This document shows, one piece after another, positions 8,917-55,829 of a stretch of DNA of 64,000 bases. Within the stretch, counting starts at the first letter, position 1, and every line of letters begins with the position of its first letter. The translations under genes and the position numbers were made by a program. The DNA is taken from NCBI RefSeq assembly GCF_001194135.2, contig NC_068985.1, positions 77,710,389 to 77,774,388 of the forward strand, read 5' to 3'. The notes under the pieces are model-generated. The model was not told the DNA's origin and searched no databases. It saw only the letters and a program-made list of their open reading frames with translations. This DNA comes from Octopus bimaculoides (taxonomy: Eukaryota).

Positions 8917-11900
8917 GTGAGTACTACTGCTGCAGACACTAATATTGTAACTGTTATTTGTTCCTTTGGCATTTTAGGTGCAGATATGGCTGTATGGTTA
9001 AGAAGTTTGTTTTGCAACCACATAGGTTCAGGTTTAACCCTTTAGCATTTAAACTGGCCATATCTGGCCAAAATATTCTTCCTGTCTTACGTTCAAAGTG
9101 GCCAGATGCAGCCTCTCACACCTATCCTACAATGTTAGTCCAAAACATATACAGTCATTTAATCAAAATTTCAAAGCTACAAGGTAATGCAGGGTAAATT
9201 CAAAATAACGTGAATAAATAAGCATTACATTTGATAGAATAATTGGAATGCTAAAGAGTTAACCCATTCTGTGACATAATGGACAAGTGTCTTTTACAAC
9301 GACCTTGAGTTAAAATTTGGTAGACAGAAACTGTACTGTAGCTTGTCGTGAGTGTGTTATATGAATGAGCACAAATTTGGATATTCTGTGCTTATGACTA
9401 CTTCAGTAAAACAATGGTGGTAGTAATATTTCTTTTCAACATTATGAATAATTGATTTGCGTTTTAAAAGATCTCTGGAATAGAATGAATTCTTGTTTGT
9501 AAAACAGGTAAGGTTTGGTGATAGGAAGAGCATCTAACCATAAAATCCTGCTTCAGATAGTGCCCTTCTAATCTCCGCTAGCATGGAAAATTGGACATTA
9601 AGTGAATATAAATTTCTGTGTGTATGCGTGTGCATGCACACGTGCATGTTTTATCATCATTTAATCTTGATGTTCCATGCTGTTATGAGTTTAATGAAAC
9701 CAAGAATTGCATCACACTCTATTATCTTCTTTGGCATGGTTTCTATGCTTGATGCCCTTCCTAATGCTAACCCCATTACAGTATGGACTAGGTGCTTTGT
9801 TTCAAGCCACCAGCACTAGTGAGGTAACCATGCAGCTCACAAGACTATGAACACCAAAGGAGTGTGGTTTTATGCTAGGAAATGAAGGGGTTAATGTATA
9901 ATTTCAAAATTAATACTGCTTAGACAGCAGTGAGATTCATTTATATGCTGCATAAACAATATATCCCTACAGCTCAGTGGTTTAACATGTTAAGACCAAT
10001 GATATGATATAAAGTGCCTTACTAGAAAACAAATAAGAGTCAGCATCTGCTGTAGAATAGTGCCTTAAGATGTCTGGTCCAACCCATACCAACATGGAAA
10101 AGGTGGACATGGAAAATTATGAGAGTAATGAAAAACAAATAATGAAATAATGAAATGTCTGTTCGTTGTTTCATTGGTCCATTTCACTGCTGGAAGTGCA
10201 TATTTGTGTTATGTTTGTTGTTGAAGTAAGCATATGTGCATTATGCATTTACAGAGTGTATTGGGTATATTTTATTGTGGCTCTAACACTAGTGGTATTA
10301 CCTTGTATTCTGTTAGCTTAAATAGTCCTCACTAGTTTACGTTGTGTTCTTGTGCTCAGGACAGAGGAGAGTGAGTGATGACAGAAGAATGAAGATGAGT
10401 GGTGGATTGGAGCATGATCGTAGAGATAGTGAGACAGATACTAATAGAGATGGACATGGTAAGAATGAGTGATGAATGTGAATAGCAAGTGGCTTGGGGG
10501 AAAGAGAGTGGTGAATGGAAATTCAGAAATGAGGATGGTAGAACATATGATGTACAAAAAGATACAATGCAATCCTTTATACATAACTCTTGTGATGAGC
10601 AAGAGAGATGATTAGCGACATTATAGGTTAGTTCCAGTTTCACCCCTTGTTAATGATGTAAATTAATGCATGAATGAAATCAACTGAATCATATTTATGT
10701 CGATAATAAATATAAGCTACCTTACCATAATTCTATCATCTTGTCTGCCATGTTTGAACTAAACTTGAGTTATTTATATGAGTATCTGAAGAAACTTGGT
10801 TATATAAATATTTACAGTAAATATGCATTACCTTGCATAGTTAGTGTCTGATAATTCACTAGTCTCGGGTAAAATCTTTAGGGAATTTAGCAACATCATT
10901 CAAATGAAGAGCAATAGTTGCATTAGTGTTAACATATCTAATCTATTTATTGATTCTCTCATTACTACTTAGGTAAGCACAGCGAAGTTTATGCCTTGCT
11001 CAAGAGGTCTAATAACACCAAAACCTATCAAGAGTTGTTACTCATACTTGCTAAAATAATTTTATTAATGAGCTAATTTTCTTTTTCTTCATAACATAAT
11101 TAATCGTAATACGATTTATGATGCTCCCTTACAGTGAACATATTACCTGTTGTTTCATAAAATGTTTGAACTTGTCTGATAATCTTATGTTTTTGTTGTA
11201 AAATATTTCAGAAACTTACATGTCTGATGTAAAAGGCTTGATAAATAAACTCATCTAACTTGTGTAAAACATTTGAGCTCTTCTGTTATGTAAAATGTTT
11301 GATCAACTTATCTATCTGGTGTAAAATGTTTGTTGTGAAATGACAGGAACCATTTTGTTATGCATTTCAGATCATTGACATGCCGGGAATATTATCAAGC
11401 AGCATATAATTATTTGGCTGTTCCCAGCCACTCACAGTCATCACAGCCGACTGTCATCCCTATACCAGAAACCTATGGTATGTATCTCTTCACTCTTACT
11501 CTTTTAGTCCTCCACAATACCTTATCTATCACATCAACACACACACACACACACAAAATTGGCTATGTTGTGTTGTAGGAAGGGTGTTTGCAATGTCAGA
11601 AAAGACAGGAAACCCTACCAATGTAATTGAATCTCTAGAGAGTATTGAAATATTAAGGAATCTTGAAAGGAAGACAAATTGTTGAACAAGCTACCCTCAT
11701 TTCAAGAATTAATTGCTGTAGATGATAACGATAAAGTAAAATAGATGTTGGGTGAAATCTTTCCTCCAATGTGGATAAGATGTTAAGACTTATCTTGGTT
11801 AAAAGGAAAACTTAGCCAGAATCATTATTGCAGGAAATGCACATATTATGTTATCTTATATGTCAATCAAAATACCTTTGTATTAATTTAGTGAAAGAAA

Positions 11901-14580
11901 ACATTAAAGAATGACCTTACTCTTACAGTAATATAATGTAAAGGGTAAAGACCCCCTTCGGTCATGAATGACCATGGGATTGCACCTAGAAAGTTACCCT
12001 CCGAGGCACAAGTCCAGGCTAGGTTGTTTATGGAACACCAGCAGTCACTTATGCATACCAGCCTCCTCTCTCCACATCACCGATGTTATCCAAGAGAAAG
12101 GCAAAGGCCGATACAACTTGGCACCAGTGACATCACAATTCATTTCTACAACTGAGTGAACTGGAGTAACTTGAAAATAAAGTATCTTGTTGAAGAACAG
12201 AGCACATAGCTCAGTCAGGGGATCAAGCTCACTATCTCATTATCTCATGATTACAGTGTAGGTTCTTAGAATATGACTCTTCTGTGTATTGATAGAACAT
12301 GTGGATACTATAGTAACTGTTCATGTTGTAGGGTGTGGGCTGATGGAATATAACTTATAGAATATGGGTTAATTGAGTGGTAGAATATGGGTTAATAGAA
12401 TGGTAGCTAATAACATATAATCTCACAAATGAGGTCCATTGACTCATAAAAGCATTTATCAGTCAAAATTAAAGCTTTACTGGTGTGATCATGTTAATTA
12501 CAAAATATAAAATTATGGGATGGTTTAAAGATAAAAATTTTGCCATTGAATGAAAATTATTTGTCTAGATTATATTGATGAATTATTGTAAATAAAATAA
12601 CTGTTTTGAAATTTATGTCTTAATCAGATATCTTAATTTTGATAATACTGTTATTTTGTACTATATAGTCTTTAACTCTGTTGTTTGTTTCAGTCATTGG
12701 ACATGAGATATCTTTAGTCAAATAAATATTAGAGGATTTGGTCAATCAAATAAATGTCAGAGGATTTGGTCAATCAAATAGATGTCAGAGGATTTGGTCA
12801 ATCAAATAGATGTCAAAGGATTTGGTCAATCAAATAAACGTTGGAGGATTTGGTCAATCAAATAAACGTTGGAGAATTTGGTCAATCAAATAGATGTCAG
12901 GGGATTTGGTCAATCAAATCGACCCCAGAACTTTTAAGTTTGATAGTTACCCAATTGGTCTCTTTGCTAAATTTGCTAAGCTATGAAGACNNNNNNNNNN
13001 TGAAGACATAAACAACCTCACACCAGTTGTCAAGTGGTAGAGAGGATACACACACACACACATACACACAATGGGCTTCCACACAGTTTCCATCTACCAA
13101 ATTCACTCACAAGGCATTAGTGAACCTGAGGCTGTTGTATAAAACGCTTGCCCAAGATGCTATGCAACAAGATTAAACCTGAACCCACGTGGTTACAAAG
13201 CCAACTTTTTAATCGCACAGCTATCAATTGTGTTATATATTTTGAGAGGAACATTTTAGGAGATATTTCAGATGACTGTCATTATGGAGAGTGATATACA
13301 TTATATTATTTAAGAAACTTTAGTTTCATTGGTAATATTACAAAATAATTTACCAAATTTACACACAAAAAGACAATTTCGGTTTCAGTACTCCATGTAA
13401 CCCCTCATAACTATATATTTTGCAATTTTCAGAAAATTTTTCTGAATTTGTGTTCCATACGCGGAAATTCATAGGATTATAAAAAAGAAAATTTTTTTAT
13501 AAACTAATAAATGAGGAAGGTATATGGTGGTCGTGAATTGTGCTAAAATTAAGAGCTAAGTCATCCTCATATAACACAAAAAATTTGTTTTGTTTTTTTT
13601 TGTATAATTGTATGAATTCTCCATGTGTAGAACATAAATATGCAAGTTTTCTCAAAATTGCAAAAAATAAAAAAAGTTATTAGGTGCTTAAACTAGAATT
13701 CTGCCAAAAGAAAAGATTGCTAAAAAAAAATCTCTAGGGTCACTCATTGATGAAACCTACTCCAGACAAGGCTTTGTTCCTTTTCCTTTTGGAGGCTTTG
13801 TTTGTTGAATTTTTCTGAAGTACTTATTTGTTGTTAACCCTTTTATTCTTCTTTGTTTTGCAGAAGAGGCTGACTACCCTTCTATAGCAGTACGGGATTT
13901 TATTGCTCATGTGGAAATGTTACACGCTGATAGTGACATTGGTTTCTCACAGCAATTTGATGTAAGTCACCCAGCTTTCCTACATTTTTTCTGTCTTTGT
14001 TGGTAACATTTTTCTAGCTATAAAACATCGGATTGGTCACCTTTTGCTTGTTGTACACCTAAAGCGATATGCTTTAGGACAGTTAGATGTATCCTTTGAG
14101 TGATATCTTCTCTAGAATTCTTTGGTATGTAGGAGAGCTGGAACATGAATGAGCTGAGGGAGTGAGTAGAGTTACAGACATTAGCTGTGTATGAGGGTTA
14201 GGAAATTGTGCTGAGATGGAATTGATGCAAATGAATGATGAGTGCTGAGTGAAGGAGGCTCCTGTGTTATCATTGGTGGAAAAAGAAAAATTGGTGAGGT
14301 CAGATCTCTCTTATAGAAGAGATGGTGAAGGCCAAGTACTTGTAAGGAAAAATGTTTGGTAAAACAAAGTGAAAAACAAATAAGATGACATTAATCTCCT
14401 TTAGCATTCAGATTACTCTGCCAAATCTAATGTTTATTTATTCACCTTGTTTTGATTTAATTATACATTATCTTGTAGCTTCAGAATTTCAATGATGTGA
14501 CTGTTTATTTTTAGAATGACATTGTAGGGCAGGTGTGCCAGAGGTCAGACTTTCGTGCAGTGACCTGAATAATAATAATG

Positions 14581-14619
<39 letters not shown>

Positions 14620-17600
14620 TCGAAAAAAGACCTTTGGAATGAGAACCCAGGTTTGAAATTTCCCCAAGACACCTGATGAAGGTTGGAGGGTATATCAGCC
14701 AAAACGTTGTGTTAACAACAAACAAGATGAGGACAAATATCCGTCAAATGTAAATAATGTACATAATTCCTCATCTCTTAAATATAGAACTGTATCTTTT
14801 CTCTTGTTTCTGTCATTACACTGCAGCCATGCTGGGGCACCAGTCTTATTCTAAAATACTTTTATGTGATGATCATGATGATGATAATGATCATCATTGT
14901 CATTATTTTTATATCTGCTTTTCCATGCTAGCATGGTTTGAATTGAGCTTTTTGAGGCAGTATTTTACAACGCTGTTCTTTCTGATGCCAGCCCTTTTAC
15001 TTACCTCTTATGACATACAGGGATAGAGATGGTGGTGTACCTATTGCCAAAACCCGGATACCCATGATAATAGAATAATAATACTGTATGGATTGATAGA
15101 TTATGATTTATAGAGTATGGAGTAATAAAGTATGACTTAAAGAGTAGTGGTTGATAAATTATGACTTCAGGAGTGTGTTCTATTGACTCATAAAGCATGT
15201 ATGAGTGCAGTCTAATGAAATCTCACAATACTAATCACATAAATTCCAATGTATAAAATTAAGGATTGGTTTAAAGATAACAATTTTACCATGGAAGAAG
15301 ACTTTGAAGAATAATGATATATTACATTTATTTTATTTATCTGCTGATAGAGACCCATAGATAAGTTATGTACTAAAAAAGAAATGAGATTAGGAAATTG
15401 GGTGCAAATTAACATTAAAACTTGATCTAAGCTTGAAATTATATGTTAACTGGGTTAGCCATGCCAAAACTCGGTCTATTTGAAGTTTGGCATTGTAAAT
15501 AAATATATGATGATATCATGTGCAGAAGAAATAAAATCTTCTGTGATCTCTTGACCAACCAAGTCTTTGTGAGCAGATTTGGTGGATGGAAGCTGAAAGA
15601 GCCCCATTGTGTGTATGCATGTGAGTGTATGTGTATTTGTGTCTCTTGTCTGGCCATGAGGAAATACTGTGACTGGAAGCACGTAAGAGTTGGCAACAGG
15701 AAGAGCATCTGGACATAGAAAATGTGCCTTAATAAACTCTGCTCAACCCACGCAGGCATGAGAAAGTGAACTTTAAAGCAATGATAATCAAATGTTTAGA
15801 AGCCAGTATATTACATATTTACAGAAAAATCCACTATGGCTGAATCTAAACTAAAATTGTGTTCTTGTTTCTGCTACTGATTCAGTTGTGCCACCAAAAA
15901 AGCATTCCCGATCCCTGCTGAAGCTGTTTAACTATCCTAAACATGACTTCTGTTCTGGAAGAAACTCTCTGACATAGCTTTTTCAACAACAACCAAATTC
16001 TGAATCTGTCTGCTATTATGATCAAGGACTGGCTGTGCATACTTTGACTTTGCCAAAACCTTTGACAAGGTGAACCATGGGATTTTATGCTACAAAGTAG
16101 AAAACATTGGTGCAACAGTCTATATTTCACTGTAGAAATTTCAATGTTATAAAACCTCCTGTGAATTGGTGAAATATGATGGGAATTTCTTATTGAAAAT
16201 ATAGATTTCACAATAGTCTCAGAATTAGGTAAGAGACTCGTGTGACTAGAACCATAGTATGTACTCTGAGGAGATGTGGAAAATTACCACTTTTAGGAAA
16301 ATGAAGTTAATCACTCCAAAAGTCGACTGCCATCATCATCATCATACACCTGTTTTCTATGCTGACATAGGTTTGACTGCCCAAATCAGTTCTTATTAGG
16401 CACCATTCGTAGAAGGCTAGTAGGACCACACCTTGCTCATACATTCCATCTACACCAAAACTATAATTAAAAATATCATTTAGCTTAGCTCCAATTGTGT
16501 TTATTTATGACATGGTGATATTTGTACTGAGCAGTTTAATTTTTCTATGAATCTATTGTCTCATGATTTATTTCCTCTTTTTTCCAGGACATTACTCAAC
16601 GAACTCGGTGTGATCTAAAATCAGAGTTTTCTGCATTACAAGAGAACAAAATGAAGAATAGATATATCAATATTGCTGCCTGTAAGTAGCCGTAAACTAT
16701 ACCTTCTCCCTGTTCTCTCTATACATAGTTATAAACTAATAGAACCTTTCTGGGCACTTATTTGGTTTAGCATGGAATGTTAAACTCTGTCCCCACTAAC
16801 TTTTTTGTTATATTTTTAAAATTTTAATCAGCTTTCAAATTTTTAGGTTTTGAACATCAGAATCTATAGGAAAATTTTTAAAGAATGTTTTTCTCCTGTA
16901 TCAGAAATAGATTTGGGTTAGGGGATTTACAGCTGTAGTACCTTATTTTTATATATAAATATTTTTGTTTTGTCATTCAAGTGCATAAACATATTTTGTT
17001 TTGCAGTTGTAATTACATTTCCATCCTTAATAATTTGATCGTGGGGGTCAGTGGGGGTCAGTTTATCTATCTCTGCTTTGTGTTTCTGATACTTCATATA
17101 GCAGAAAATGCAGAATGTCATTTACATATCCGATATGGGGGTAGGGGCCCAGTATTTAATAGTTTCACTCTCTTCCATATTTTTTAATGCATCTCTTTTT
17201 CTAGATCTTTATGTCTAGGTAAATCAGCCTCTTCATCATCATCACCAACAGTAGAGGGTAAAAAATGGTAAAGTTACCTTTTCAAGTCATGCCAGTTCAT
17301 AAGGGATGGTTTCCATGGCGTATAAATTCCCCACCTGGATGGGACACAGGTCCATTGCAGGATTACTCATTTTTGCCAGCTGAGTGGACTGGAGCAACAT
17401 GAAATGAAGTATTTTGCTCAAGAACACAATACTGCATCCAGTAATCAAAACCACAATCTTATAATCATGAGTCCAACACGCCTAGCCACTAAACCAGTTT
17501 GGGGTTTACACCAGTGATTTTCAACCAGGGTCCATATGCCCACTGAGGGCCCATATAAGATTTTGGAGGGTCCACGTAACAGAATAGTAAATTGGGGATC

Positions 17601-18958
17601 CACAAGAGTGTTTTTAGGGACCCTGAAAAAATTTTGCTTTAGATGTATGTATTGGTGTGTATTGCAAGAAACGGCTAGGTTTCTTTCTCTAACATTTTGC
17701 ATAGTTCCACCTATGCAAGTTAATGTGTGAAAAGCAAAGTAGGAGTTTTGATAGAAATTTCTATAAAACTAGTTTTTTAAACAGTGAATGGCTATGGTGG
17801 GGGGTCCACCAGAATAAAATAGTAATTAAAGGGGTCCATAGATAAAAAAAAAAAAATGGCTGAGAAACCCTGGTCTACACAATGCACTTTGTCACCTTCA
17901 CCACCACTGCCTTCAGTATTACCATCATCATGGTCATTATTATCACCTCTGTAATTTAGGTAATGACCGTGGAACTGGATATGGTTGTGCAATGTTAGAC
18001 CAGCATTTAGGTGCCATACCATTTGGAGTAGGTACTTTACTGTTCAGTACTCAGATGTTATTATCAGAACATTTCATATTTGTCTTCAGGTTTACAAACG
18101 AAAAAAAAAAAAAAAAAGAGAAAGCTCTTTCCTGAGACTCATAAAGCCAGTTTCTTGGATTCTGTAGTGTATATATTCCACCCAATGTGGGATGCCAGTC
18201 TGTTGCAGAAATACTCATTTTTGTCAGTTGAGTGTACATAAGATGAAGTGTTTTGCTCAAGAACAAATTGCATTTCCCAGTCCAGGAATCAAAACTAACA
18301 CCCCTGGGGTTAATCAATCATCAATACTCCTTACTTTTTATAAAACACCTTGTTCCTTGTTTAAAAAAAGACATCGACATCATCATCGCTTTTTTAATGG
18401 CGGCAGTTTTGAAGATCATGATGATGGTGGTTGTGGTGGTGATGATGTTGATGATTATTATCATTAAGGTGGCGAGCTGGCAGAACCATTAGCACACCGG
18501 GCAAAATGCTAGTAGCATTTTATCTGTTCGTATGCTCTGAATTCAAATTCTGCCATGGCTGTCTTTGCCCTTCATCCTTTTGGGGGTCGATAAATTAAGT
18601 ACCGGTGAAACTCTGGGGTCAGTGTAATCAACTAGTCTCTTCCCCACAAATTTCAGGCCTTGTGTCTTTAGCAAAAACGATTATTACTATTATTTAAAGT
18701 AGATTTCTTCATAAAAGCTAAAAAGGGTTTAAATCAAAATGTTCCATCTTTAGCAAAACCTTAATCACTTCCTTCTTCAAGTATCACTCAAAATTGTTAC
18801 CAACAATTATGAATTTTTATTATTATTCTTTCAGATGATCACACGAGATGTCAGTTGAAGCCAATAATGAGTAGGCAAAAACATTCTGATTACATAAATG
18901 CCAATTATGTTGATGTAAGTAGCATGATTTTTTAATTGCTCTTTAATGGCCATAACGT

Positions 18959-19002
<44 letters not shown>

Positions 19003-19012
19003 NNNNNNNNNN

Positions 19013-19052
<40 letters not shown>

Positions 19053-22000
19053 CACACACCCTTGCACTGGCTCTTATAACTGAGACATTCTAAACTTGAA
19101 GATACTGGTTTATATAGCACCATTGATTACACATTTGTGGGCATAAACCAACAATGGTGCCATTACTTGCTTTCATCTTCTGCTAGAAATAGTAGTGTAT
19201 CACCTACCTTCTTACAAAAGAAGGACATATTAAAAATATAAGATGGTCCTAAGTTTGCTTCTGCAAGACTGTGTTGCAGACATTGGAATGACGATGTTAC
19301 AGCTAAACTATCACTGCACACATGCATGTGCATGCATGCACACTCACTCACACACACAGACAATTTGTCTTGTTGTTTCTATTGCATTGCCTGTACTCTT
19401 CATGATACATACAATGCCTAGTAGTACCGTTTGTTGTATGTTGTGTGGTTGTGTATGGGGGAGGGTGGAAGCAAAGATGAGGTAGTATATCAGTTATTGC
19501 TTTGGAAGCAGACTCATCATAAAAGATCAAGAAGACTACCTCACTTTATGTACATCAACAAGCAGATACCAGAATGCCTGAATGGATGGATGAGTATGTC
19601 TCTCCTCCAGGCTGAGGGTTGGTGGGGGCTCAGACATAATCCACCTCACCTCACCACACACCATGGTCTTGTTGCTGCCATGCACTCCACAAGAATCCTA
19701 TCTGGCCAGTCCTTGATATTATTGCTCTTTATCTTCCTATTTTTTGCTTGCAAACCTGTTTTATATCTACTCAACTCCTGAGGATGAGTTTATGGCTTTT
19801 AGGCTCTGATAACTTGGCCAAAATATTACAGATTTTGGCCAAGTTCTGACTACCATCACCAACTATTGTTCTTATTGTGTCATACTATACTAAACAAAAT
19901 GGTTTGTGCTGCAGTTGCTCGCAGTCCTTAAATAGATTTAATAAGTTTATATACAAAGCTACAATAACCTCCATAACAATGACATTATTGATATGTTATT
20001 CTTTTAAACCCGAACTCACTTCATCTATTGTTCCTTGTTGTAAGTGACCCTCTTTTGTTGTTATTATTGGTCAACAATGCTACAATTCTGTTCCTGCCTC
20101 CTCCTGGACTGAATTGTTCATTCTATGAGTAATCTACTGGATCCAAGCACTCATCTTGTACAAGATACTTAGATCATCATCATTTAATGTTCATATTCCA
20201 TGCTGGCATGGGTTGAAAGGGTCTGATGAGTTCAAGGACTGCATCATGATCCAATGTCTGCTTTGGCATGATTTCTACAGCTGGATGCCCTTCCTCATGC
20301 CAACCACTTTACTGTGTGTATTGGATGTTTTTTCCTGCTACCAGCACTATTGAGATTTCCATGCAACTCACAAGACAACAAATGGCTCGAGAGGGGGGAG
20401 TTCAGCTTTATGCTGGAACTGAGTTAGAAAATTTGCCTGCTGTAATGAACAGTTGTGCTTATTGAAGATCACTAGGAAGTATTTGAGTTCACTCATGTAA
20501 GAGGAAATATTTATGCCCACTTAAACAGGGACCTTTTGTTGAAGAAGCTATGAAAGAGAGTTTCTTCCAGAACAGAGGCCATGTTGAGGATTGCTAAAAA
20601 GCTTCATGAGGGACTAGGAATGCTTTTTTGATGCAACTGAATCAGCAGAAGAAACAAGAATACAATTTTAATTCAGATTCAGCCCTAACCATTTTAAAAG
20701 TTGGAAAAGTGGATTTTTCTGTAAATATGTAATATACTGGCTTCTAAACATTTGATTATTATCATTGTTTTAAGGTTCACTTTCCCATGCCTGCATGGGT
20801 TGGGCAGAGTTTATTAAGGCAGATTTTCTATGTCCAGATGCTCTTACGTGTTTCCAATCACAGTATTTCTTCATGGCCATACAGGAGACATAAATACACA
20901 TACACTTACATACATGCATACATACAATGGGATTCTATCAGCTTCCATACACCAAATCCACTCACAAAGACTTGGTTGGCCCAGAGACAACAGAAGTCTT
21001 TTTTTTCTTATGCACATGATGCTGTCATCATATATTTATTTACAATGTCAATATTTAAATAGACTGAATTTTGACATGGCCAACCCATCTTACAAACTTT
21101 ATTGAAGTAGATACCATGAGAAAAACTCTCATCTTGGCTTTTTGATAATAAAAAAGGCATTCTTGTTTATATTGCCAGCGGGGAGATAAATCCCTGCCAC
21201 CTCCAGCACTGAGACCACCTGATCACATAATTTCAACTTTCCTTGATTTTGTCAACATTGGATGCTCAATCATTAGAGATAGCAGTGATTCATCCCTCTA
21301 CCAGCAATATATAGAAAATCAGTGCCAAAACAGGAACTGGCGTCGCAATTAGCTAGTGAGCTTGTTAAAAAAAGATATATATATATATTGACGGAAGCAG
21401 TATTAATACCGAGAGATAATATTTATACCCACTGAAATGTGGGTGTTCTGTAAGAACAAGCTATACTGCAGTAGATATGAGAGAAACTCTCATATTGGCT
21501 TTTGGTGCAAAATGGACTCTTGTTTATATCGTTGTAAGGAGGAGGCAGAAGAGGAGAAGTGTATGTGTAAAACTCTTGGTCATGTGTTGTTTGCCTGCAT
21601 CATTTTTAAAACCATTCCCAAGATACCTGTTATGGAGATTGTGTCTGTTTTCAGTCCTTACTTTCTGGTTATGTTTACTTCCAGATCTTTATATTTGAAT
21701 TGTTTCTTCCTTTCTTTTAGAATTATTATTATTATTTCTTTGTCTCTGTTGCAGGGCTATAACAAGGCACGTGCCTACATTGCTACCCAGGGACCACTAC
21801 CACAAACAGTCGATGACTTTTGGCGTATGGTCTGGGAACAAAACACTGCTGTGATTGTTATGATAACAAACTTAATGGAACGTGGAAGGGTAAGAATCTT
21901 TGATGTCCTTGCTAAAATACATACACTTTTCATAAGTATTGAGTACTTATTTTCTCTGGTAAATTCAGTGTGTTATTCTTACTTGTTATAGTATATAACT

Positions 22001-24866
22001 TTGTACTTCAGTGTGTGAGGAATTGGTTTTGTGTTTTGTTTTTACATGAATTTATCCTGTATTTGTTTGTCAGTCTTCTACTCTCAAATTTTCTTTTTCT
22101 CTCTGTGTCTTACAAAATCAATGAGTGAGTTCTCTTTGTGTGTGTGTAGACCAACCACTATTTTCTTCATTGATTTTGTCTTTTTTTTTCCTCTCCTCAA
22201 GCTACTTTTAAATTCTTCAAGTGATATTATCGTATCTCTTTAAGTATATATTTCCTAATTAATCACTCTTACTTTCTCTCTCATTTACAGAGGAAATGTG
22301 ACCAGTATTGGCCGAATGAAGGGACAGAGGACTATGGTGTGATGTCAGTGAGGTTACTGAGTACATTTGCGCGTGCTCACTACACAGTCAGAATATTTTC
22401 CCTCAGGAATACAAAGAAAAGAAAGGTACCTTATTGATCACATGCTTTTCACACAGAATCATAGCAGTAAAGTGCATTTTCTACACAGCTCAACTCTCTT
22501 GTGTACCTTCAACTCTTCAACTACCCCTAATTCACTAGCTGAAATCCAATTCTCTACCTGCCCCAACTCCTACCTTGCAACAAAATCTACATAAGCATAA
22601 ATTCCTCAAGTCNNNNNNNNNNNNNNNNNNNNNNNNNNNNNNNNNNNNNNNNNNNNNNNNNNNNNNNNNNNNNNNNNNNNNNNNNNNNNNNNNNNNNNNN
22701 NNNNNNNNNNNNNNNNNNGACCCTCAAAAAACCCACCCATGTCCAAGTCTCCACCTGGCTCTTCACCTATGCTCAGTTTTCTGCTGGCTTCCTTCAACTC
22801 TAACTCACCAGAACTTAGAAACATAACGTCAACATTTATACCTACCATCAACTCCTTACCTTCCCTCCACTCTCTACATAGTGTCTACATTGCCCTAATT
22901 CTCTACAAACACCCAACTTATTACATGTCCAACAACTCTTCTAAGAAAATCCACAGTTCTTTCATGTACAAGAATTACACTTAATAGATATTTTCCTCAC
23001 TCGTGACATGTAATAAAGTCACTCATATATACAATATACCATTCAGTTTATCAAAGGACATAACATTGTGTCATATACTAAGGTCACGCACTCTATAGGT
23101 TAGTCATATATATATTGTGTATTGTATTATATATATAGTAACATACTACTCAGTACTTGTTATACTATGCCTATTGTTTAGTACAATACCCAATCATTGA
23201 AAACTGCTCCAAGGCATGTTTACCAAATACTATATTAAGTATATAAATGCACAAATGATAGTATTTTAATGTTCTCTATGTGGCTTGTGTGTTTTCTCGT
23301 CTTTGTTTTGTTTGCAATGTCCTGTACCCAGATATGCACCTATACATACAGGTGGATGTCGGTATGCACATACCTGTACGTATATATGCATATACTCACT
23401 TACTATTTGTTTTTACATGATTGAACGCAGCGTCTCCAATTGTAAGTAGTTTTTCGTAACTTCATATTTTCCGACGCTACTCTATCTCTTTCTCTTCCTC
23501 TATCATTTTTCCCCACTCTCGTTCTTCCTCTTTACTACTACGTATCTCGCTTTACCCCTCTCGTTCTTCCTCTGTTACTACTACGTATCTCTTTTNNNNN
23601 NNNNNNNNNNNNNNNNNNNNNNNNNNNNNNNNNNNNNNNNNNNNNNNNNNNNNNNNNNNNNNNNNNNNNNNNNNNNNNNNNNNNNNNNNNNNNNNNNNNN
23701 NNNNNNNNNNNNNNNNNNNNNNNNNNNNNNNNNNNNNNNNNNNNNNNNNNNNNNNNNNNNNNNNNNNNNNNNNNNNNNNNNNNNNNNNNNNNNNNNNNNN
23801 NNNNNNNNNNNNNNNNNNNNNNNNNNNNNNNNNNNNNNNNNNNNNNNNNNNNNNNNNNNNNNNNNNNNNNNNNNNNNNNNNNNNNNNNNNNNNNNNNNNN
23901 NNNNNNNNNNNNNNNNNNNNNNNNNNNNNNNNNNNNNNNNNNNNNNNNNNNNNNNNNNNNNNNNNNNNNNNNNNNNNNNNNNNNNNNNNNNNNNNNNNNN
24001 NNNNNNNNNNNNNNNNNNNNNNNNNNNNNNNNNNNNNNNNNNNNNNNNNNNNNNNNNNNNNNNNNNNNNNNNNNNNNNNNNNNNNNNNNNNNNNNNNNNN
24101 NNNNNNNNNNNNNNNNNNNNNNNNNNNNNNNNNNNNNNNNNNNNNNNNNNNNNNNNNNNNNNNNNNNNNNNNNNNNNNNNNNNNNNNNNNNNNNNNNNNN
24201 NNNNNNNNNNNNNNNNNNNNNNNNNNNNNNNNNNNNNNNNNNNNNNNNNNNNNNNNNNNNNNNNNNNNNNNNNNNNNNNNNNNNNNNNNNNNNNNNNNNN
24301 NNNNNNNNNNNNNNNNNNNNNNNNNNNNNNNNNNNNNNNTATATTTTTTCTTTTTTTTTTCCCTTTTTCTATCTATTAGAGTTACTTCCCTTATGTTTAA
24401 CTGTTTTTCGTAACACCTGTTGTCATTTAGTAGCCGACAAGAATGTACTGTAGCTCTTTGCTCCAACATTCGAATCTCTGAGTACTAATAATGACAACTG
24501 TTTGCTGTTTGCTCTATAAATTATACCACATATATATCTATATATATATATATATATATATACATATCCTCATTATCTTCAATGTCTGTTTTCCATTCTA
24601 TCTTGTGTTGGTTGGTTTGACCAGAGTTGGCAAACCAGAGAGCTGCACTAGGTTCCAGTTTGATTTGGTTTTGTTTCTACAGCTGGATGCCCTTCCAAAC
24701 ACCAGCCATTTTATAGTGTGTGGTGGGTACTTTTAATATTGCACTGATATGAGCGCTTTTGCATGGTACTGATATGAGTGCTTCTTATGTAGCACCAACA
24801 CAGGACTCTTGCAGGCCAATCCTCTTCATAAGGAGGGCAGCTTTAACCCTTCTGCTGTGGAGGATG

Positions 24867-25863: not shown

Positions 25864-26316
25864 TAGGCACAAGTGTGGTAAGAAGTTTGCTTCCCAACTA
25901 CATGATTATGAGTTCAGTCCCCCTGCGTGGCACCTGGGACAAATATCTTCTACTTTCGCCACAGGATGACCAAAGCCTTGAGAGTTAATTGGAAAGAAGC
26001 TTGTCATGTGTGTGTGCCTGTACATATGTTTGTTACTGTCCCTTTGCTTGTTACCATTATGCAAGGGGTGTCTTTTGTTTCCAGTCTTATGTGACAACAT
26101 GTCTGATGATGGGGAAATATTACTTTATCTTGGAAACAGGTGATGCTTCACAAAGAAAAAAATCCACTTCACCAAATTTTGTGTGACCCATAAGCATGGA
26201 AAAGTGAATGTTAAAACAATGATGTTAATGACAACAAGATATATATATATTACATATTTTTTATTCTCTTATTTGTTTCAGTCATTAGACTGTGGCCATG
26301 CGGGGACCACTATATA

Positions 26317-26357
<41 letters not shown>

Positions 26358-29300
26358 GAACTTTACTGTTCAGTATAAACTGTAAAAGGAGTATCAAACT
26401 TGCTTACTTTTGCAGGGCAGATTGAAGTATAAACTAGATCTTGCAGGCCAAATAGAGACAATTATTCCTAAAGCGATATTTATGTTACTGACCAAGGTAA
26501 ATGGATAAAAGAGCCAATGTACAGAATAACAACTTTAACAGCAATAAATAAAGGAAAGAATATGAAGTGTTAGCAAAAAGTTGTGTAAACTTCATCCACA
26601 CGGTGTGTGTGTATTATATATTTGCTATTTTTTAAAAATAAAGTTCTTTAGAGTGAGAATGTGGATAGGAAATGTCGAAATGAATGCATATGCTTCTTTA
26701 ATAAAAAGTCAATTATTGATAGAAAACTTATACTATTTCAGCTGCAGTACCTTTCAATATTGTTCATATCATGTGAATCCATTTGGGTGAAATTGTGTGT
26801 AAATTTGGAGGAATTAGGGGTGGATTCTTGCTTGATTTAGCCTATTAAATGCAACATATGTCTTTTAGTATATGGATTTATAAGCTTCTTTTTCAATAGT
26901 TAAGGTAATGAAAATATTCCCTAAAGTACATTGATTTGACTAATCACAGCTGGTCTTGATCACAATTCTTGTCAGGTTCTGACTCTGAATGCATTTTAGT
27001 GATATATATTTTATGGATTATTTTAAAATTACAAAATAATAATAAACAGGCATAAAATAAAGATAAGATAGAGCCAGGCTCCTGACTAAATAGGGATGCA
27101 GGCTAGATTTGTTTCATGGAACATATGTTTGATGTTGCTGGGATATATATATATATACCTTGGACAATGTGATAATGCATGATATTGGCATACATATCTA
27201 GCACTGTGATATACACACCATATAGAAGTATCATGAAAATTACCTTACACACCGGTGAACATTTTCATATAGTTAATACAGTGATGGCATATATTCCATA
27301 CAATGATATCATGTAAATTAATGTTGCCATACAGACCATGTAAAGATGGCATAATACCCTTTAAGAATGTCACTCACACCTTCCCATTTTGCCCCACACA
27401 TAGGGTATCACATGTTATATAATATGTATATGATAAGTATACCATATTGATATGTGATATAATATGTGTATCGTATTGATACTTAATATATAGATACTAC
27501 TATGACCAACAGTTATAATTTGATGCATGGGCCAGTCAGTAGCATGATCAAATTATTAACAAACACCATACATTTGCAATACATATCATATACCAACATC
27601 ATTATCACACACCATACATTGTATAGATAAATGCTTTATCTGTATATTCTCTTAACAGAAACACTCCGCTGAGCGTGTGGTTTACCAATACCACTACACT
27701 GAATGGCCTGATCATGGTGTTCCTGATTATACGTTGCCTGTCCTTACTTTTGTGCGGAAGTCTGCTGCAGCCAACCCCCCTGGTGCTGGACCTATCGTTG
27801 TACACTGCAGGTGAGTAAAAGTCAACAATGGAGATATTTTTTACCATTTGCCATTCTTATACATAAACACACCTACCGGTTTAAGTTCATTAAGTATTTC
27901 CTTTTATCTGCTTTTGATAATAATAATAATTTTGAATTTTGAAATTCATTAATTTTGTTCTTCATGAGTTCTTGCTTAATAAAATTTTTGAATCAGTTCC
28001 AGCATTTTAAAGAATATTCTCTGCTTTATAGAAACTTTGCCTGCTTGGAAATCATAGAATAATGTGGAGTTCTCTAAAGTGAAACTTATTCTTCCATTGT
28101 TTTGGGTTACTTAGAAGTCAAAGAATAAAATTTGTTTCATGATATGGAACTCCAGACTTAGAACAAATAAATGAAGATATATATGAATAAAATGGAAGTT
28201 GTGATCAGATGTTTGATATTCAGCATATTTTGACTGTGCTACTGATTGCTTTGTATTTCAGTGCTGGTGTTGGGCGTACCGGTACCTATATATTAATTGA
28301 TAGTATGATGCAGCAGATAAAGGAGAAAGGCTCAGTAAATGTAGCTGGCTTTCTCTTACATATTCGACAACAGAGAAACTTTCTGGTCCAAACTGAGGTA
28401 AGTAGAACACATTACTTACTTTATCTTGTTACTTCATGCATTCTAAGTTACATAGAACAGGTAGAAATTGGGAAGAGGTGTTTGTCTGTTAGTGTACTGA
28501 ACAAACAAGTGTCTTAGTGCTTAGTAGAAAAGATACCTGTATGTATGTGAAGATGTTGCTTATTCACCGATCATCCCAGATGAAGCTGACTTCTATCCTA
28601 CCAAGGTGCTATTGTCTCCTTTCTCCCTCTCTCTGGTCTTGTGCCGTTTCTCCTCAGGTGCTCAAGACTCGCTTGTCTCTTATTCTCTCGAATCGTCCCT
28701 GTACAACTGATAATGGAGTTCTTCCTCTTCTGAACATTGGTTTTCTGTAATTTCCTCTTTGCCCATGTTTTCCCTGATTTGTAGCTGTTTAAAAGGAACA
28801 TGAACTACAATGATCTCACCAGTCTCAGAGGTAATATGATGGCCATGAACAAACCTAGGAAGATATGGAATGAGGTAGTGAAGCATGATGTTTGAACGTT
28901 GGGCCTTACAGAAGCAATGACAAGTGACCAAGACCTTCGGTGATATGCCATGCTTGAGAAGGCTTATCAAACCAAGTGAAATCATAGTAATGCTGGTGTC
29001 ACATGACTGGCACTCATGTTGGTGGCACATAAAAGCACCCATTACACTCTTGGAGTGATTGGTGTTAGGAAGGGCATCCAGACGTAGAAACCATGCTAAA
29101 TCAAACTGGAACTTGGTGCAGATCTCTGGTTTACTAGTTTCGGTCAAACCATCTAACCCATGCCAGTATGGAAAGCAGACACTAAATGACGATATGATGA
29201 TGATATTATAAAAAAATTCATGTGTGTAGGGTGAATAGATGTATGTGTGTGTTGATGTGTAAGGTAAACAGATGTAATTTAAAAGAGATGTAAATCTTTT

Positions 29301-32300
29301 AGAAGATGAATACATGTGAATTAGTAGTTTGCAGTAGAAAAGATGTTGCTAAAACATATGTGAATATGTTGGTTTGTAGCAGAACAAATATAAAAGTTTA
29401 CCAAACCTAAATGAATTAAACCAAAGCACTATTTCATGAAGAATACTGTTGCAAGATGTTGTTTTGTTGTGTTGTAGGACCAGTACATGTTTATTCATGA
29501 TGTTCTCGTGGAATACATTCTTGGTGGTGGTGATACTGAAATTCAAGATGCTAAGATAATGAAATATTTTGAAGATTTAGAAAAACCAAATGCAAACGGA
29601 GAGAACCACCTTGAAAGACAATTCCTGGTAAGTATATTAATATTACTTTCTGATGATTTGGTACCAATTTCTCTGTTAGATAGAGTTTTTGTAATAAGTG
29701 TGATGTGATGTATTGTGCAGCAGTGGTTGCCTAGCAGCTATAAATATGGTGAATGTAATCTTGGATGCTCTATTAAATTCCAATCCATGACAATATGGTG
29801 AAAATAAAGGGTAAAATGGACAACAATAATTACGATCATGTTAATAATTATCTCTCACATAAGTACAAAACCAGAAATTTGGGAGCATTGACTTTCTTAC
29901 TTTATTTTGTCAACCCCAGAAAAGTAAACAGTAATGTTGATTTTGGCCTATAACCACAGAAAGCAAAGCACCTTGTCTGACACTTTTATGATTCTACCAA
30001 TCCAACAATAATACAATCAAAACGACTGAGTGTGACTGCCTATATAAACCAACTTTTAACACTGGTAGTGCTCCAGCATGGCTACAGCTTTTAGGCTGAA
30101 ACATATGCAGTAATCCCTTGACTATTGCGGGTGTTATGTTCCAAAATGCCCTGTGATAGGTGAAAATCCCCGAAGTAGAAACAGTACTGTACTGTATATT
30201 TTTTTAATATTTTTGTAATTTGTATATATTTATTTTATTATAAATGCAAAACACCACCACCCACTCGCCTCCAGAGTTTCATTTTCCATACAGTATGTGT
30301 AATTCTTTGTTTACTCATACTCATCTACGGTACATCATGTGTTTTCTTTTAATATATCTTAATTAATGTGTTATACAGTGCAGTACTGTACTGTATTTTT
30401 ATTTATTAACTTTTAGGCTCGAAAATGCTTATTTTACCACAGGAATAATTAAAATCTAAAAAAATATTAATTATAAATACCTATCAGCCACAGAAACCTG
30501 CAATATACTGAGGAGTCTGCAATATAAATTTATATATATTAGCCAGAAAAATCCGCAATGTACTGAAGGCACGATAGGTGTACCATGTTATGGCGAGTGA
30601 ATACTTTAAAAGAAATATATAGGTGTTAGGAAGAGTATCCAGCTATAAAAACCCTGCCAAAACAGACAGGGAAACATATTGCAGTCTTCTGCCTAGCCAA
30701 CTCCTGTCAAACCATCCAACCCATGCCTGCTTGGAAAGCAGATGTTATATATATATATATATATATATATATACTGTCCAGATTATCTAAACTCTGTATA
30801 GATTAATATGTCACTGATTGGTGTAACACATCTTAAACTTCCTGCTGACTTATATCTAATTGTGTATTATTTCAAACTGAATTTAATTGTGTATCATTTC
30901 ATAAGCTGTTACCTTCATATCCAAGCTGTCTTGCAATTGCTGTATTATTCTAATCATACATACACTGTACATTCATAAGTTTCCAGAAAGCTCTTTCAAT
31001 TCCCGGCAATATCATTTCAGTTAATTCACTCTTTACCCCATTTTCTCTTGTGTCAGCAGATGCTTATCACTCATATTTTCTATACTTTCCTTAGAATATG
31101 ATACTAGTGAAGCCATAGACCCAGTCTTCAACAATGGGATTATATTTACTTATTTTTTTAATGATGTCTTAAATAATTTCATATTCAAAATAGTTTTGTC
31201 TTAACTGTCCCACCAAGTTCTCTGTTTTAAATCTCAACCCCTTCTAATGTTCACCTAGACAATTCAGGTTTCAACTGTCAAGGTATCAGTCTCTGTCCAA
31301 CAAGTTTATGGTTGAGCTTGTGGCAGTGGAGACCACTGGCATTCTTGGCCTCCAGACCATATCATCTCTGCTCACCACTGTTGAGGTAGCGATGGCTATC
31401 CACAAATGCAAGCCCCATGGATCAGTGGCTGTTCCAGCGCATCTTCCTTGCCATCTTCTGGGACAACTCCTTTTCCATTTTCTCTTCTGGGGCCATGAGG
31501 AAATTGTATATTCCACTTCTTAAATACTTAGATCCATGCAATAGTTTATTATTTTAATTCTATCAGATTATGAAATTTTAATTGTTTTATTTTTAAAAAC
31601 AATAGTTCCTTGATAAGTCGTTAATTTCCTAAATCTTTAATTTCAGTTGTCAACGTGCCGTAGACCCAAAGAACATGAGTACTCTCAGGCTGTAAAACCT
31701 GTAAATGTACCAAAGAATCGTATTCAAGAGATGCTACCTATCGATATGAAAAGGGTTCTTTTGCCTGTAAAACCTGGCGTGGACGGCTCGGATTATATTA
31801 ATGCTTCATACCTGCAGGTAAGTACACCTAAACAGATTCATCATTGGTTCTTTTAATGTTTTTATTTTGGTGGGTGGGGTTCTCATTTCCCCTAACCTAG
31901 CTCCATATTGTCATGTTTTAAACTGATGTAGCTAATGGGGCCATTGNNNNNNNNNNNNNNNNNNNNNNNNNNNNNNNNNNNNNNNNNNNNNNNNNNNNNN
32001 NNNNNNNNNNNNNNNNNNNNNNNNNNNNNNNNNNNNNNNNNNNNNNNNNNNNNNNNNNNNNNNNNNNNNNNCTCTTTCTTCCATTCTTTCATGCTTGCCT
32101 CCATTCTTGCATGGATTACATGGTTATACCATCTGAACATATTGTTTTGCTATAAAGACAACTACTGAATTTATGCTAACATTTAATAATTTTAATTAAT
32201 TGTTCCTTAGACTCATCTGACCAATTGGCACCTTGTGAACTGGAGCTTTACTTTTGGTTTATGAGGTGAAACTGGCACTTCATTGCTTATGACAATGAGG

Positions 32301-55609: not shown

Positions 55610-55825
55610 AAGTAAGCACATAAAATGTGCAACAAAGTGGAAAAAAGAGTACTCAAATACCAGAGGTAGAGTAATATGCTTTATTTAAAAGCAGCAGAAA
55701 TATAACAAAAGACTGTTACTCTGAGTTTCATGTTCCCGTTCATCTAACAAAACTGTCCAATGAACGGGAACGTGAAACTCAGAGTAACAGTCTTTTGTTA
55801 TATTTCTGCTGCTTTTAAATAAAGC

Positions 55826-55829
<4 letters not shown>
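55610..55829. mobile_element. Penelope-like inverted pseudo-LTR structure containing a 70-bp near-perfect inverted repeat
   Basis: 55674-55743 vs 55760-55829 are reverse complements at 69 of 70 positions with a 16-nt loop; the loop and right arm carry a hammerhead-like fold. Confidence 0.7.

What the first reader, a model, noticed from the sequence alone, without database searches (positions are those of the whole stretch)
15430..21100. ~560-bp local inverted duplication bracketing PTP exons 4 and 5
Seen: 15430-15990 and 20530-21100 are colinear reverse complements over a SINE body, unique flanking DNA and the start of a CR1/L2 fragment. One 52-nt block is a perfect match (15784-15835 vs 20708-20759). 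They share idiosyncratic bases, so they are not independent SINE insertions. The LINE fragment continues only beside arm A, so A looks like the donor. Inferred: in the pre-mRNA the arms form a stem of about 0.5 kb that loops out about 4.5 kb holding both exons. That is the known geometry for ADAR hyper-editing, back-splicing and exon skipping. The patchy identity could reflect gene conversion or selection for pairing.
Basis: partly seen in the sequence, partly recalled or inferred. Interest (0 to 1): 0.8.

Follow-up and report, generated by a model that had tools for sequence, protein, structure and literature searches.

The report
Old inverted repeat bracketing two exons
Two diverged 0.55-kb inverted copies of the same intron DNA sit on either side of two exons of a receptor tyrosine phosphatase gene; they could pair in the unspliced RNA, but nothing suggests this is more than a neutral local duplication of a kind common in this repeat-rich gene.

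Summary
Arm A (15451-15989) and arm B (20536-21087, reverse complement) form one colinear alignment of 571 columns. Identity is 81% overall and 89% without gaps, and K2P distance is 0.115. It is the best repeat pair in the 64-kb window. The arms share a 5'-truncated SINE core with shared derived bases, plus about 290 nt that has no other copy in the window.

The arms lie in two introns of a + strand PTPRG/PTPRZ-like gene. They bracket exons 16588-16681 (KNRY motif) and 18835-18914 (DYINANYVD), 174 nt together and in frame.

The N gap (19003-19012) sits inside an intronic (CA)n run. Exon order and strand fix the orientation of both contigs.

Folding puts 477 A-B pairs in the minimum-energy structure.

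I found no sign of selection. The 52-nt perfect block is within chance (P about 0.05), and G·U versus A·C mismatches are 17 versus 19. Two other inverted SINE pairs also bracket exons in this window.

The claim that a LINE starts inside the arms got no tool support. Genome copy number, other species, editing and back-splicing could not be tested.

Verdict: an old, probably neutral, local inverted duplication. It is a plausible ADAR or circRNA substrate, ordinary in kind.

The parts
15451..15989 (+). Arm A of the inverted duplication (539 nt), in the intron upstream of exon 16588-16681. It ends 598 nt before that exon's 3' splice site.
20536..21087 (-). Arm B (552 nt), the reverse complement of arm A, in the intron downstream of exon 18835-18914. 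It starts 1621 nt after that exon and ends 667 nt before the next exon (21755).
15537..15640 (+). 5'-truncated SINE core inside arm A (model positions 102-202 of 223; the tRNA-like head is absent). The counterpart in arm B is about 20896-20989.
   Evidence: nhmmer; copies elsewhere in the window; shared derived bases
15677..15787 (+). Second SINE-type module ending in an ATGATAAT tail. It matches 9502-9611 and 26130-26223 only weakly (64-67%).
15784..15835 (+). 52-nt block identical in both arms (partner 20708-20759). Its length is within chance expectation.
   Evidence: P=0.053
15979..15983 (+). T5 run, the first run of four or more T on the + strand after the start of arm A. It lies just before the end of homology, with six matching bases (15984-15989) after it.
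16046..16066 (+). Degenerate reverse-transcriptase motif ([13 protein letters not shown] context) just outside arm A. It is the only evidence for a LINE fragment.
16588..16681 (+). PTP D1 exon (94 nt) encoding ...[13 protein letters not shown] (KNRY phosphotyrosine-recognition motif). AG/GT splice sites with a strong polypyrimidine tract.
18835..18914 (+). PTP D1 exon (80 nt) encoding [27 protein letters not shown]. With the previous exon it totals 174 nt, which is in frame.
18958..19058 (.). (CA)n microsatellite in the intron, containing the assembly gap 19003-19012.
21755..21889 (+). Next D1 exon ([15 protein letters not shown]...ERGR), downstream of arm B. It anchors the orientation of the contig that carries arm B.

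Best explanation
An old DNA-level local inverted duplication. A stretch of about 0.54 kb of intron DNA (unique sequence, a 5'-truncated SINE, then about 200 nt of further flank) exists as two inverted copies 4.5 kb apart. They lie in neighbouring introns of a PTPRG/PTPRZ-like receptor phosphatase gene, and the copying left the two exons between them untouched.

The likeliest route is a replication template switch or repair synthesis onto the opposite strand. This is inferred, because such events are inherently local and inverted. The copies have since drifted apart neutrally to about 11% substitutions plus 9 indels.

When both introns are still present in one pre-mRNA, the arms are predicted to form an imperfect duplex of about 480 bp. 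That would make them a likely target for ADAR hyper-editing. It would bring the 3' splice site of the first exon and the 5' splice site of the second exon within about 0.6 and 1.6 kb of the base of the stem. This could allow some back-splicing (a 174-nt circle) or in-frame skipping of both exons. These RNA consequences are inferred, not shown, and I see no evidence that they are selected.
For: One colinear alignment runs through SINE and non-SINE DNA. The SINE is truncated at the same point in both arms and shares derived bases against 4 other copies. The non-SINE parts have no other copy in 64 kb, while SINE families recur 5-10 times there. It is the best repeat pair in the window. Neither end shows a target-site duplication, tail or terminal inverted repeat, and no homology resumes beyond the ends. 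The divergence looks neutral: 36 transitions against 19 transversions, 4 CpG-type changes, a 16-nt indel flanked by an AAGAG direct repeat, G·U 17 against A·C 19, and a perfect block at P=0.053. The gene and exons are established. Duplex prediction: cofold -731.7 kcal/mol against about -131 kcal/mol for arm A cofolded with shuffled arm B, arm A's own folding energy subtracted (ten plain, non-dinucleotide shuffles); 476-477 A-B pairs, longest uninterrupted helix 49 bp, and the stem is present in the MFE of the whole 5.95-kb segment. Octopus is reported to have exceptionally high hyper-editing, tied to nearby inverted repeats (PMC5625713). Flanking inverted repeats promote exon circularisation (PMC4201285).
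Against: Genome-wide copy number could not be measured, so a low-copy composite repeat family is not excluded. The unit has no T4 or longer run on the + strand for 532 nt, and its homology ends just after the first T5. That would fit an RNA-derived unit better than an arbitrary DNA segment. The direction of copying (A to B) rests on a reverse-transcriptase reading frame crossing the boundary, which the tools did not confirm. As for the RNA effect, arm A's intron can be spliced out about 4.5 kb of transcription before arm B exists. Both exons have strong splice sites and encode core catalytic-domain motifs. PMC4201285 states that more than thermodynamics decides circularisation.
Confidence: 0.65

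Rival explanations
1. The 540-nt unit is one member-type of a composite repeat family, for example a long SINE-like retroposon. Arms A and B would then be two independent insertions in opposite orientation.
For: The unit is largely built of transposon-derived pieces. It is free of T4 or longer runs on one strand for 532 nt, true of only 2.4% of windows, and ends just after a T5, as a Pol III-transcribed element would. The reverse-transcriptase signal begins only at the boundary, so arm A might simply abut an older LINE fragment.
Against: There is no third copy of the non-SINE parts in 64 kb. A and B are each other's closest relatives at 89% ungapped identity, while other SINE copies match them at 64-79%. 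No tRNA-like head or A/B boxes are present. No target-site duplications were found. Two members of a rare family landing 4.5 kb apart would be an unlikely coincidence.
Confidence: 0.15
2. Arm B is an RNA-mediated copy of arm A. A transcript starting near 15451 and ending at the first oligo-T was reverse-transcribed and inserted, or used as a repair template, at a nearby break.
For: There is no T4 or longer run in the unit until 15979-15983, and homology ends at 15989. The joint chance for the 190-nt non-SINE flank alone is roughly 0.22 x 0.11.
Against: The SINE head with its promoter boxes is absent from both arms, so the loss predates the duplication. Homology runs six bases (CAACAA) past the T run rather than ending in it. 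There is no tail and no target-site duplication. Retrocopies have no known reason to land 4.5 kb from their source.
Confidence: 0.07
3. The stem is a selected RNA structure that regulates circularisation or skipping of the two D1 exons, or editing, in this gene.
For: It is the strongest pairing in the window and brackets an in-frame pair of exons. It contains a 52-nt perfect block.
Against: There is no excess of pair-preserving G·U over A·C changes, 17 against 19. The perfect block is within chance at P=0.053. Indels of 15-16 nt put bulges in the stem. Weaker inverted SINE pairs bracket other exons of the same gene, so the geometry is a by-product of repeat density.
Confidence: 0.08
4. The inverted pair is an assembly or scaffolding artefact.
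For: An N gap lies between the arms, and the contig carrying arm B (19013-22612) is bounded by gaps on both sides.
Against: The arms differ by 55 substitutions and 9 indels, so this is not a collapsed or duplicated read set. Both contigs carry exons of the same gene on the + strand in the right order, and the (CA)n run continues on the same strand across the gap.
Confidence: 0.02

Closest known systems
Inverted Alu (SINE) pairs in neighbouring introns of mammalian genes, which are ADAR hyper-editing substrates and promote exon circularisation (Jeck 2013 as cited in PMC4201285; PMC5625713)
   Same: Reverse-complementary sequences lie in the two introns flanking internal exons. The identity (81-89%) and length are of the same order, and the predicted duplex is long and imperfect.
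   Different: Here the complementarity comes from one local duplication that carries unique flanking DNA, not from two independent insertions of a SINE. The arms are about 1.8 times as long as an Alu. The loop is 4.5 kb, longer than the +/-2 kb within which PMC5625713 looked for partners. No RNA evidence is available.
Mouse Sry locus: one exon flanked by >15-kb inverted repeats that drive circular Sry RNA (Capel 1993 and Dubin 1995, as summarised in PMC4201285)
   Same: A non-transposon, locus-specific inverted duplication flanks exonic sequence. At least 400 nt of complementarity was reported as needed there, and about 480 paired bases are available here.
   Different: The Sry arms are far longer and nearly identical, and circularisation has been shown experimentally. 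Here the arms are 0.54 kb and 11% diverged, and any effect is hypothetical.
Template-switch or MMBIR-type local inverted duplications (my own knowledge of the replication-error literature, not checked here)
   Same: The second copy is inverted and lies within a few kb of the first, and it has no transposon hallmarks at its ends.
   Different: The junctions are too old (K2P 0.115) to show microhomology. The mechanism is therefore assigned by exclusion.
PTPRG/PTPRZ (type V) receptor tyrosine phosphatases, the host gene
   Same: The D1 domain is 62% identical to human PTPRG over 199 aa. The KNRY, DYINA, TQGP, KCDQYWP, WPD and HCS motifs are present, and a second PTP domain follows.
   Different: Only the intracellular part lies in the window. 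The carbonic-anhydrase-like ectodomain that defines the type was not seen.

Membership tests
Intronic inverted-repeat pair flanking exons (IRAlu-type dsRNA former) | Two reverse-complementary segments on the same strand of one transcription unit, in the introns on either side of internal exons | tested here: met
   Arms at 15451-15989 and 20536-21087. Exons 16588-16681 and 18835-18914 lie between them, and exons of the same + strand gene lie on both outer sides.
Intronic inverted-repeat pair flanking exons (IRAlu-type dsRNA former) | The arms pair with each other in preference to other partners (predicted) | tested here: met
   477 A-B pairs in the MFE of 15300-21250, with only 6 and 10 arm bases paired elsewhere. 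No competing inverted copy of the arms scores above 69 bits.
Intronic inverted-repeat pair flanking exons (IRAlu-type dsRNA former) | Clusters of A-to-G mismatches on both arms in RNA | not testable with these tools
   No RNA-seq data or octopus read sets were reachable.
circRNA-producing locus | Back-splice junction joining the 18914 donor to the 16588 acceptor | not testable with these tools
   No transcript data. Only the geometry and the in-frame 174-nt size are known.
DNA-level segmental inverted duplication | Colinear homology that crosses transposon boundaries into non-repeat DNA | tested here: met
   The SINE profile covers only 15537-15640, while homology spans 15451-15989.
DNA-level segmental inverted duplication | Only two copies in the genome | not testable with these tools
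   Only two copies in the 64-kb window. Metagenome scans found nothing, which is uninformative. No cephalopod genome is available.
SINE retrocopy with 3' transduction | Internal Pol III promoter (tRNA-like head) at the 5' end of the unit | tested here: not met
   nhmmer finds no match to model positions 1-101. ARAGORN and Rfam found nothing.
SINE retrocopy with 3' transduction | Target-site duplication and 3' tail at the copy | tested here: not met
   Best flank-to-flank match scores 5, P=0.90. There is no A-rich or microsatellite tail at 20536.
LINE (CR1/L2) fragment inside the arms | Reverse-transcriptase homology within 15892-15989 | tested here: not met
   RVT_1 reaches only E 0.044 and starts at 15979. 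Peptides from the arms alone give no Pfam hit. PDB and the protein database gave nothing. The resemblance I recall to the CR1 reverse transcriptase is a lead only.
Receptor-type PTP, PTPRG/PTPRZ group | Y_phosphatase domain with its catalytic motifs, and tandem D1-D2 domains | tested here: met
   PF00102 at E 5e-63. Best named hits are PTPRG and PTPRZ. A second set of DYINA and FWRMVW motifs lies at 31791 and 34935.
Receptor-type PTP, PTPRG/PTPRZ group | Carbonic-anhydrase-like and fibronectin ectodomain | not tested
   The upstream part of the gene was not examined and probably lies outside the window.

The most novel reading that the evidence does not exclude
The 0.5-kb stem is a maintained switch. 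When it forms, the KNRY and DYINA exons are circularised into a 174-nt circRNA or skipped in frame. The result would be a catalytically disabled PTPRG-like isoform in neurons, with ADAR editing of the stem tuning how often this happens.
Probability: 0.05. Interest if true: 0.55.

Novelty: new member of a known kind. Interest (0 to 1): 0.2.

Why it matters
If the arms pair in vivo, this locus gives a clean natural test case in a cephalopod. It is a long inverted pair that is not purely SINE, and it brackets two in-frame catalytic-domain exons. Editing, circularisation and skipping could all be read out from one amplicon.

As it stands, it mainly shows that exon-bracketing inverted repeats are frequent in this gene (three pairs in 64 kb). 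This one shows no sequence signature of selection. It adds an instance, not a principle.

Tried and rejected
1. Cross-species and genome-wide tests all failed.
- The two-exon peptide found no homologue.
- The 199-aa D1 query returned nothing closer than 64% identity, the closest being vertebrate PTPRG-type proteins and unnamed run-assembly fragments, and no hit named as a cephalopod. No orthologous locus could be fetched.
- Ten ORFs from the arms and the loop are absent from the protein collection.
- Two exact-pattern scans of metagenome contigs found nothing.

2. LINE identity could not be established.
- The third protein search, with the stitched reverse-transcriptase peptide, found nothing.
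- Peptides from the arms alone gave no Pfam hit.
- The PDB search gave only chance hits to a homing endonuclease at E about 0.6.
- tblastx found no other reverse-transcriptase copy in the window.

3. I considered that the unit starts at the first base of the SINE. A MAFFT alignment suggested this, and it would have pointed to a retrocopy. A profile search shows the SINE head is absent, so I rejected it.

4. Target-site duplications were tested around arm B, around the SINE in arm A and around the whole unit. None is significant.

5. Gene conversion or selection as the cause of the 52-nt block was rejected by permutation.

6. Selection for pairing was tested by G·U/A·C asymmetry. There is no signal.

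7. Rfam and tRNA scans of 13000-23000 found nothing.
Full report
**Observation**

The repeat scan returns seven colinear inverted blocks running from 15444-15989 to 20536-21094. BLAST joins them into a single alignment, 15451-15989 against 21087-20536, with 571 columns, 81.1% identity and E 5e-161.

My own local alignment gives 465 matches, 55 mismatches and 51 gap columns in nine indel events. That is 81.4% identity overall and 89.4% ungapped, with a K2P distance of 0.115. The 52-nt perfect block at 15784-15835 / 20708-20759 is exact. In an all-against-all comparison of the window, this is the highest-scoring repeat pair, at 558 bits against 409 for the next.

**The assembly gap**

The gap at 19003-19012 lies between the arms, 88 nt downstream of the exon ending at 18914. 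It sits inside a (CA)n run that continues on the same strand on both sides.

- The contig to its left carries three + strand exons of the gene.
- The contig to its right (19013-22612) carries arm B and the next two + strand exons, in the right order.
- Flipping either contig would put its exons on the wrong strand, so the inverted orientation of the arms is not a scaffolding error.
- The 55 substitutions and 9 indels rule out a duplicated-read artefact.

Only the loop length, nominally 4546 nt, is uncertain.

**What the arms are made of**

I built a profile from eight other SINE copies in the window. It matches arm A only at 15537-15640, which is model positions 102-202 of 223, and it matches the equivalent part of arm B. 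The tRNA-like head is absent from both arms. A second SINE-type module at about 15677-15787 matches other copies only weakly, at 64-67%.

In the core, A and B share several derived bases that four other copies lack. The remaining roughly 290 nt (15451-15536 and about 15790-15989) have no other copy in the window. Homology does not resume beyond either end.

**The LINE claim**

The claim that the arms include the start of a CR1/L2 fragment got no tool support.

- A degenerate reverse-transcriptase motif ([13 protein letters not shown], 16046-16066) lies just outside arm A.
- Pfam RVT_1 scores only 13.9 bits (E 0.044), below its cut-off of 29.6. The match starts at 15979, practically at the boundary.
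- Peptides from the arms alone, the PDB and the protein database gave nothing.
- No other reverse-transcriptase copy exists in the window.

From memory, the arm peptide [16 protein letters not shown]...IKDWLC resembles the CR1 reverse-transcriptase segment upstream of that motif. That would carry the LINE across the boundary and make A the donor. It is a lead, not a result.

**The host gene**

The gene is on the + strand. Exons with PTP motifs lie at the following positions:

| Exon | Motif or domain |
|---|---|
| about 13881-13961 | – |
| 16588-16681 | KNRY |
| 18835-18914 | DYINANYVD |
| 21755-21889 | TQGP, FWRMVW |
| 22291-22425 | KCDQYWP |
| 27659-27810 | WPD, VHCS |
| 28245-28397 | – |
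| from about 31620 | second PTP domain |

The stitched D1 sequence scores 5e-63 against Pfam Y_phosphatase. It is 62% identical to human PTPRG, and the other top named hits are PTPRG and PTPRZ.

The two bracketed exons are 94 and 80 nt, 174 nt in total. Skipping both would be in frame and would remove the KNRY and DYINA motifs. A back-spliced product would be a 174-nt circle. Both exons have consensus AG/GTAAGT sites with good pyrimidine tracts.

**Pairing**

Cofolding the two arms gives -731.7 kcal/mol with 476 intermolecular pairs. The longest uninterrupted helix is 49 bp. Arm A cofolded with a shuffled arm B gives about -131 kcal/mol once arm A's own folding energy is subtracted (ten plain shuffles). 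The minimum-energy fold of the whole 5951-nt segment keeps 477 A-B pairs. The stem is therefore thermodynamically dominant.

Whether it forms in vivo is an inference with a kinetic caveat. Arm A's intron can be removed as soon as 16588 is transcribed, about 4.5 kb of transcription before arm B exists.

**Selection**

I found no signal of selection.

- A perfect run of 52 or more occurs in 5.3% of permutations of the observed differences.
- In the sense RNA, transitions produce 17 G·U wobbles and 19 A·C mismatches, so pair-preserving changes are not favoured.
- Four differences are CpG-type transitions.
- Indels of 15-16 nt introduce bulges, and one of them is flanked by an AAGAG direct repeat.

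The geometry is also not unique. Of 15 inverted pairs of at least 100 nt within 10 kb in this window, two others bracket mapped exons of this gene. They are 24559-24735 / 29030-29210 and 9112-9256 / 14399-14544.

**Origin**

The shared truncation point of the SINE, the shared derived bases and the colinear non-repeat DNA show one ancestral segment copied once. The local, inverted placement, with no target-site duplication (P 0.45-0.95), tail or terminal repeats, fits a DNA-level template switch or repair synthesis.

One oddity remains. Arm A has no T4 or longer run on the + strand for 532 nt, which is true of 2.4% of windows at a density of 9.7 runs per kb. The first T5 (15979-15983) lies just before the end of homology. 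That would suit a Pol III-type transcript unit or a composite retroposon. However, the promoter-bearing head is missing, homology runs six bases past the T run, and a retrocopy landing 4.5 kb from its source would be a remarkable coincidence. I keep these as minor rivals.

**Comparison with known systems**

The structure works like inverted Alu pairs in mammalian introns and like the mouse Sry inverted repeats. Flanking complementarity promotes circularisation, although "more than simple thermodynamics" decides it (PMC4201285).

Hyper-editing in Metazoa is mostly in duplexes formed by neighbouring inverted repeats. Octopus bimaculoides has an exceptionally high hyper-editing rate and dsRNA-forming potential (PMC5625713). 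The arms exceed that study's 65% identity criterion but lie further apart than its +/-2 kb search range.

It agrees with my recollection of octopus SINE sequences, but no tool confirmed it.

**Verdict**

This is a real, old and probably neutral local inverted duplication. It is the strongest potential dsRNA former in the window. It is a plausible ADAR substrate and a possible weak promoter of back-splicing or skipping, and it is ordinary in kind. The key refutation tests (genome copy number, orthologues, RNA evidence) were out of reach of the tools.

Noticed in passing
window 55674-55829: Near-perfect hairpin: two 70-nt arms, 99% complementary, separated by a 16-nt loop and flanked on both sides by (TA)n runs. 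It is a far tighter potential dsRNA than the finding. It could be a foldback or MITE-like element, a hairpin RNA source or a fold-back assembly artefact.
   Followed up: partly
window 24559-24735 and 29030-29210; 9112-9256 and 14399-14544: Two further inverted SINE pairs (183 nt at 76%, 147 nt at 78%) also bracket exons of the same phosphatase gene. The first encloses the exons for the WPD loop and the catalytic cysteine.
   Followed up: partly
window 15380-15983: No run of four or more T on the + strand for about 600 nt, in a window that averages 9.7 such runs per kb. The first T5 lies just before the end of arm homology. Unexplained; it could be chance.
   Followed up: yes
window 33804-34117 and 34187-34483: Direct repeat of about 314 nt at 85% identity, 70 nt apart, in the intron just upstream of the D2-domain exon at 34872-34991.
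   Followed up: no
window 60343-61340: Cluster of tandem and inverted SINE-like copies. It includes overlapping direct repeats 60343-60870 / 60580-61095 at 77%, and self-inverted matches at 60998-61337.
   Followed up: no
window 22613-22718, 23596-24339 and seven other N runs: The window has nine assembly gaps (1283 N in all). A 744-N gap lies in the long intron between the exons at 22291-22425 and 27659-27810, so intron lengths in this gene are only estimates.
   Followed up: no
window 31620-34991: A second, membrane-distal PTP domain (D2) starts here ([18 protein letters not shown]). D1 keeps the catalytic [11 protein letters not shown] split across the 27810 / 28245 exon junction.
   Followed up: partly
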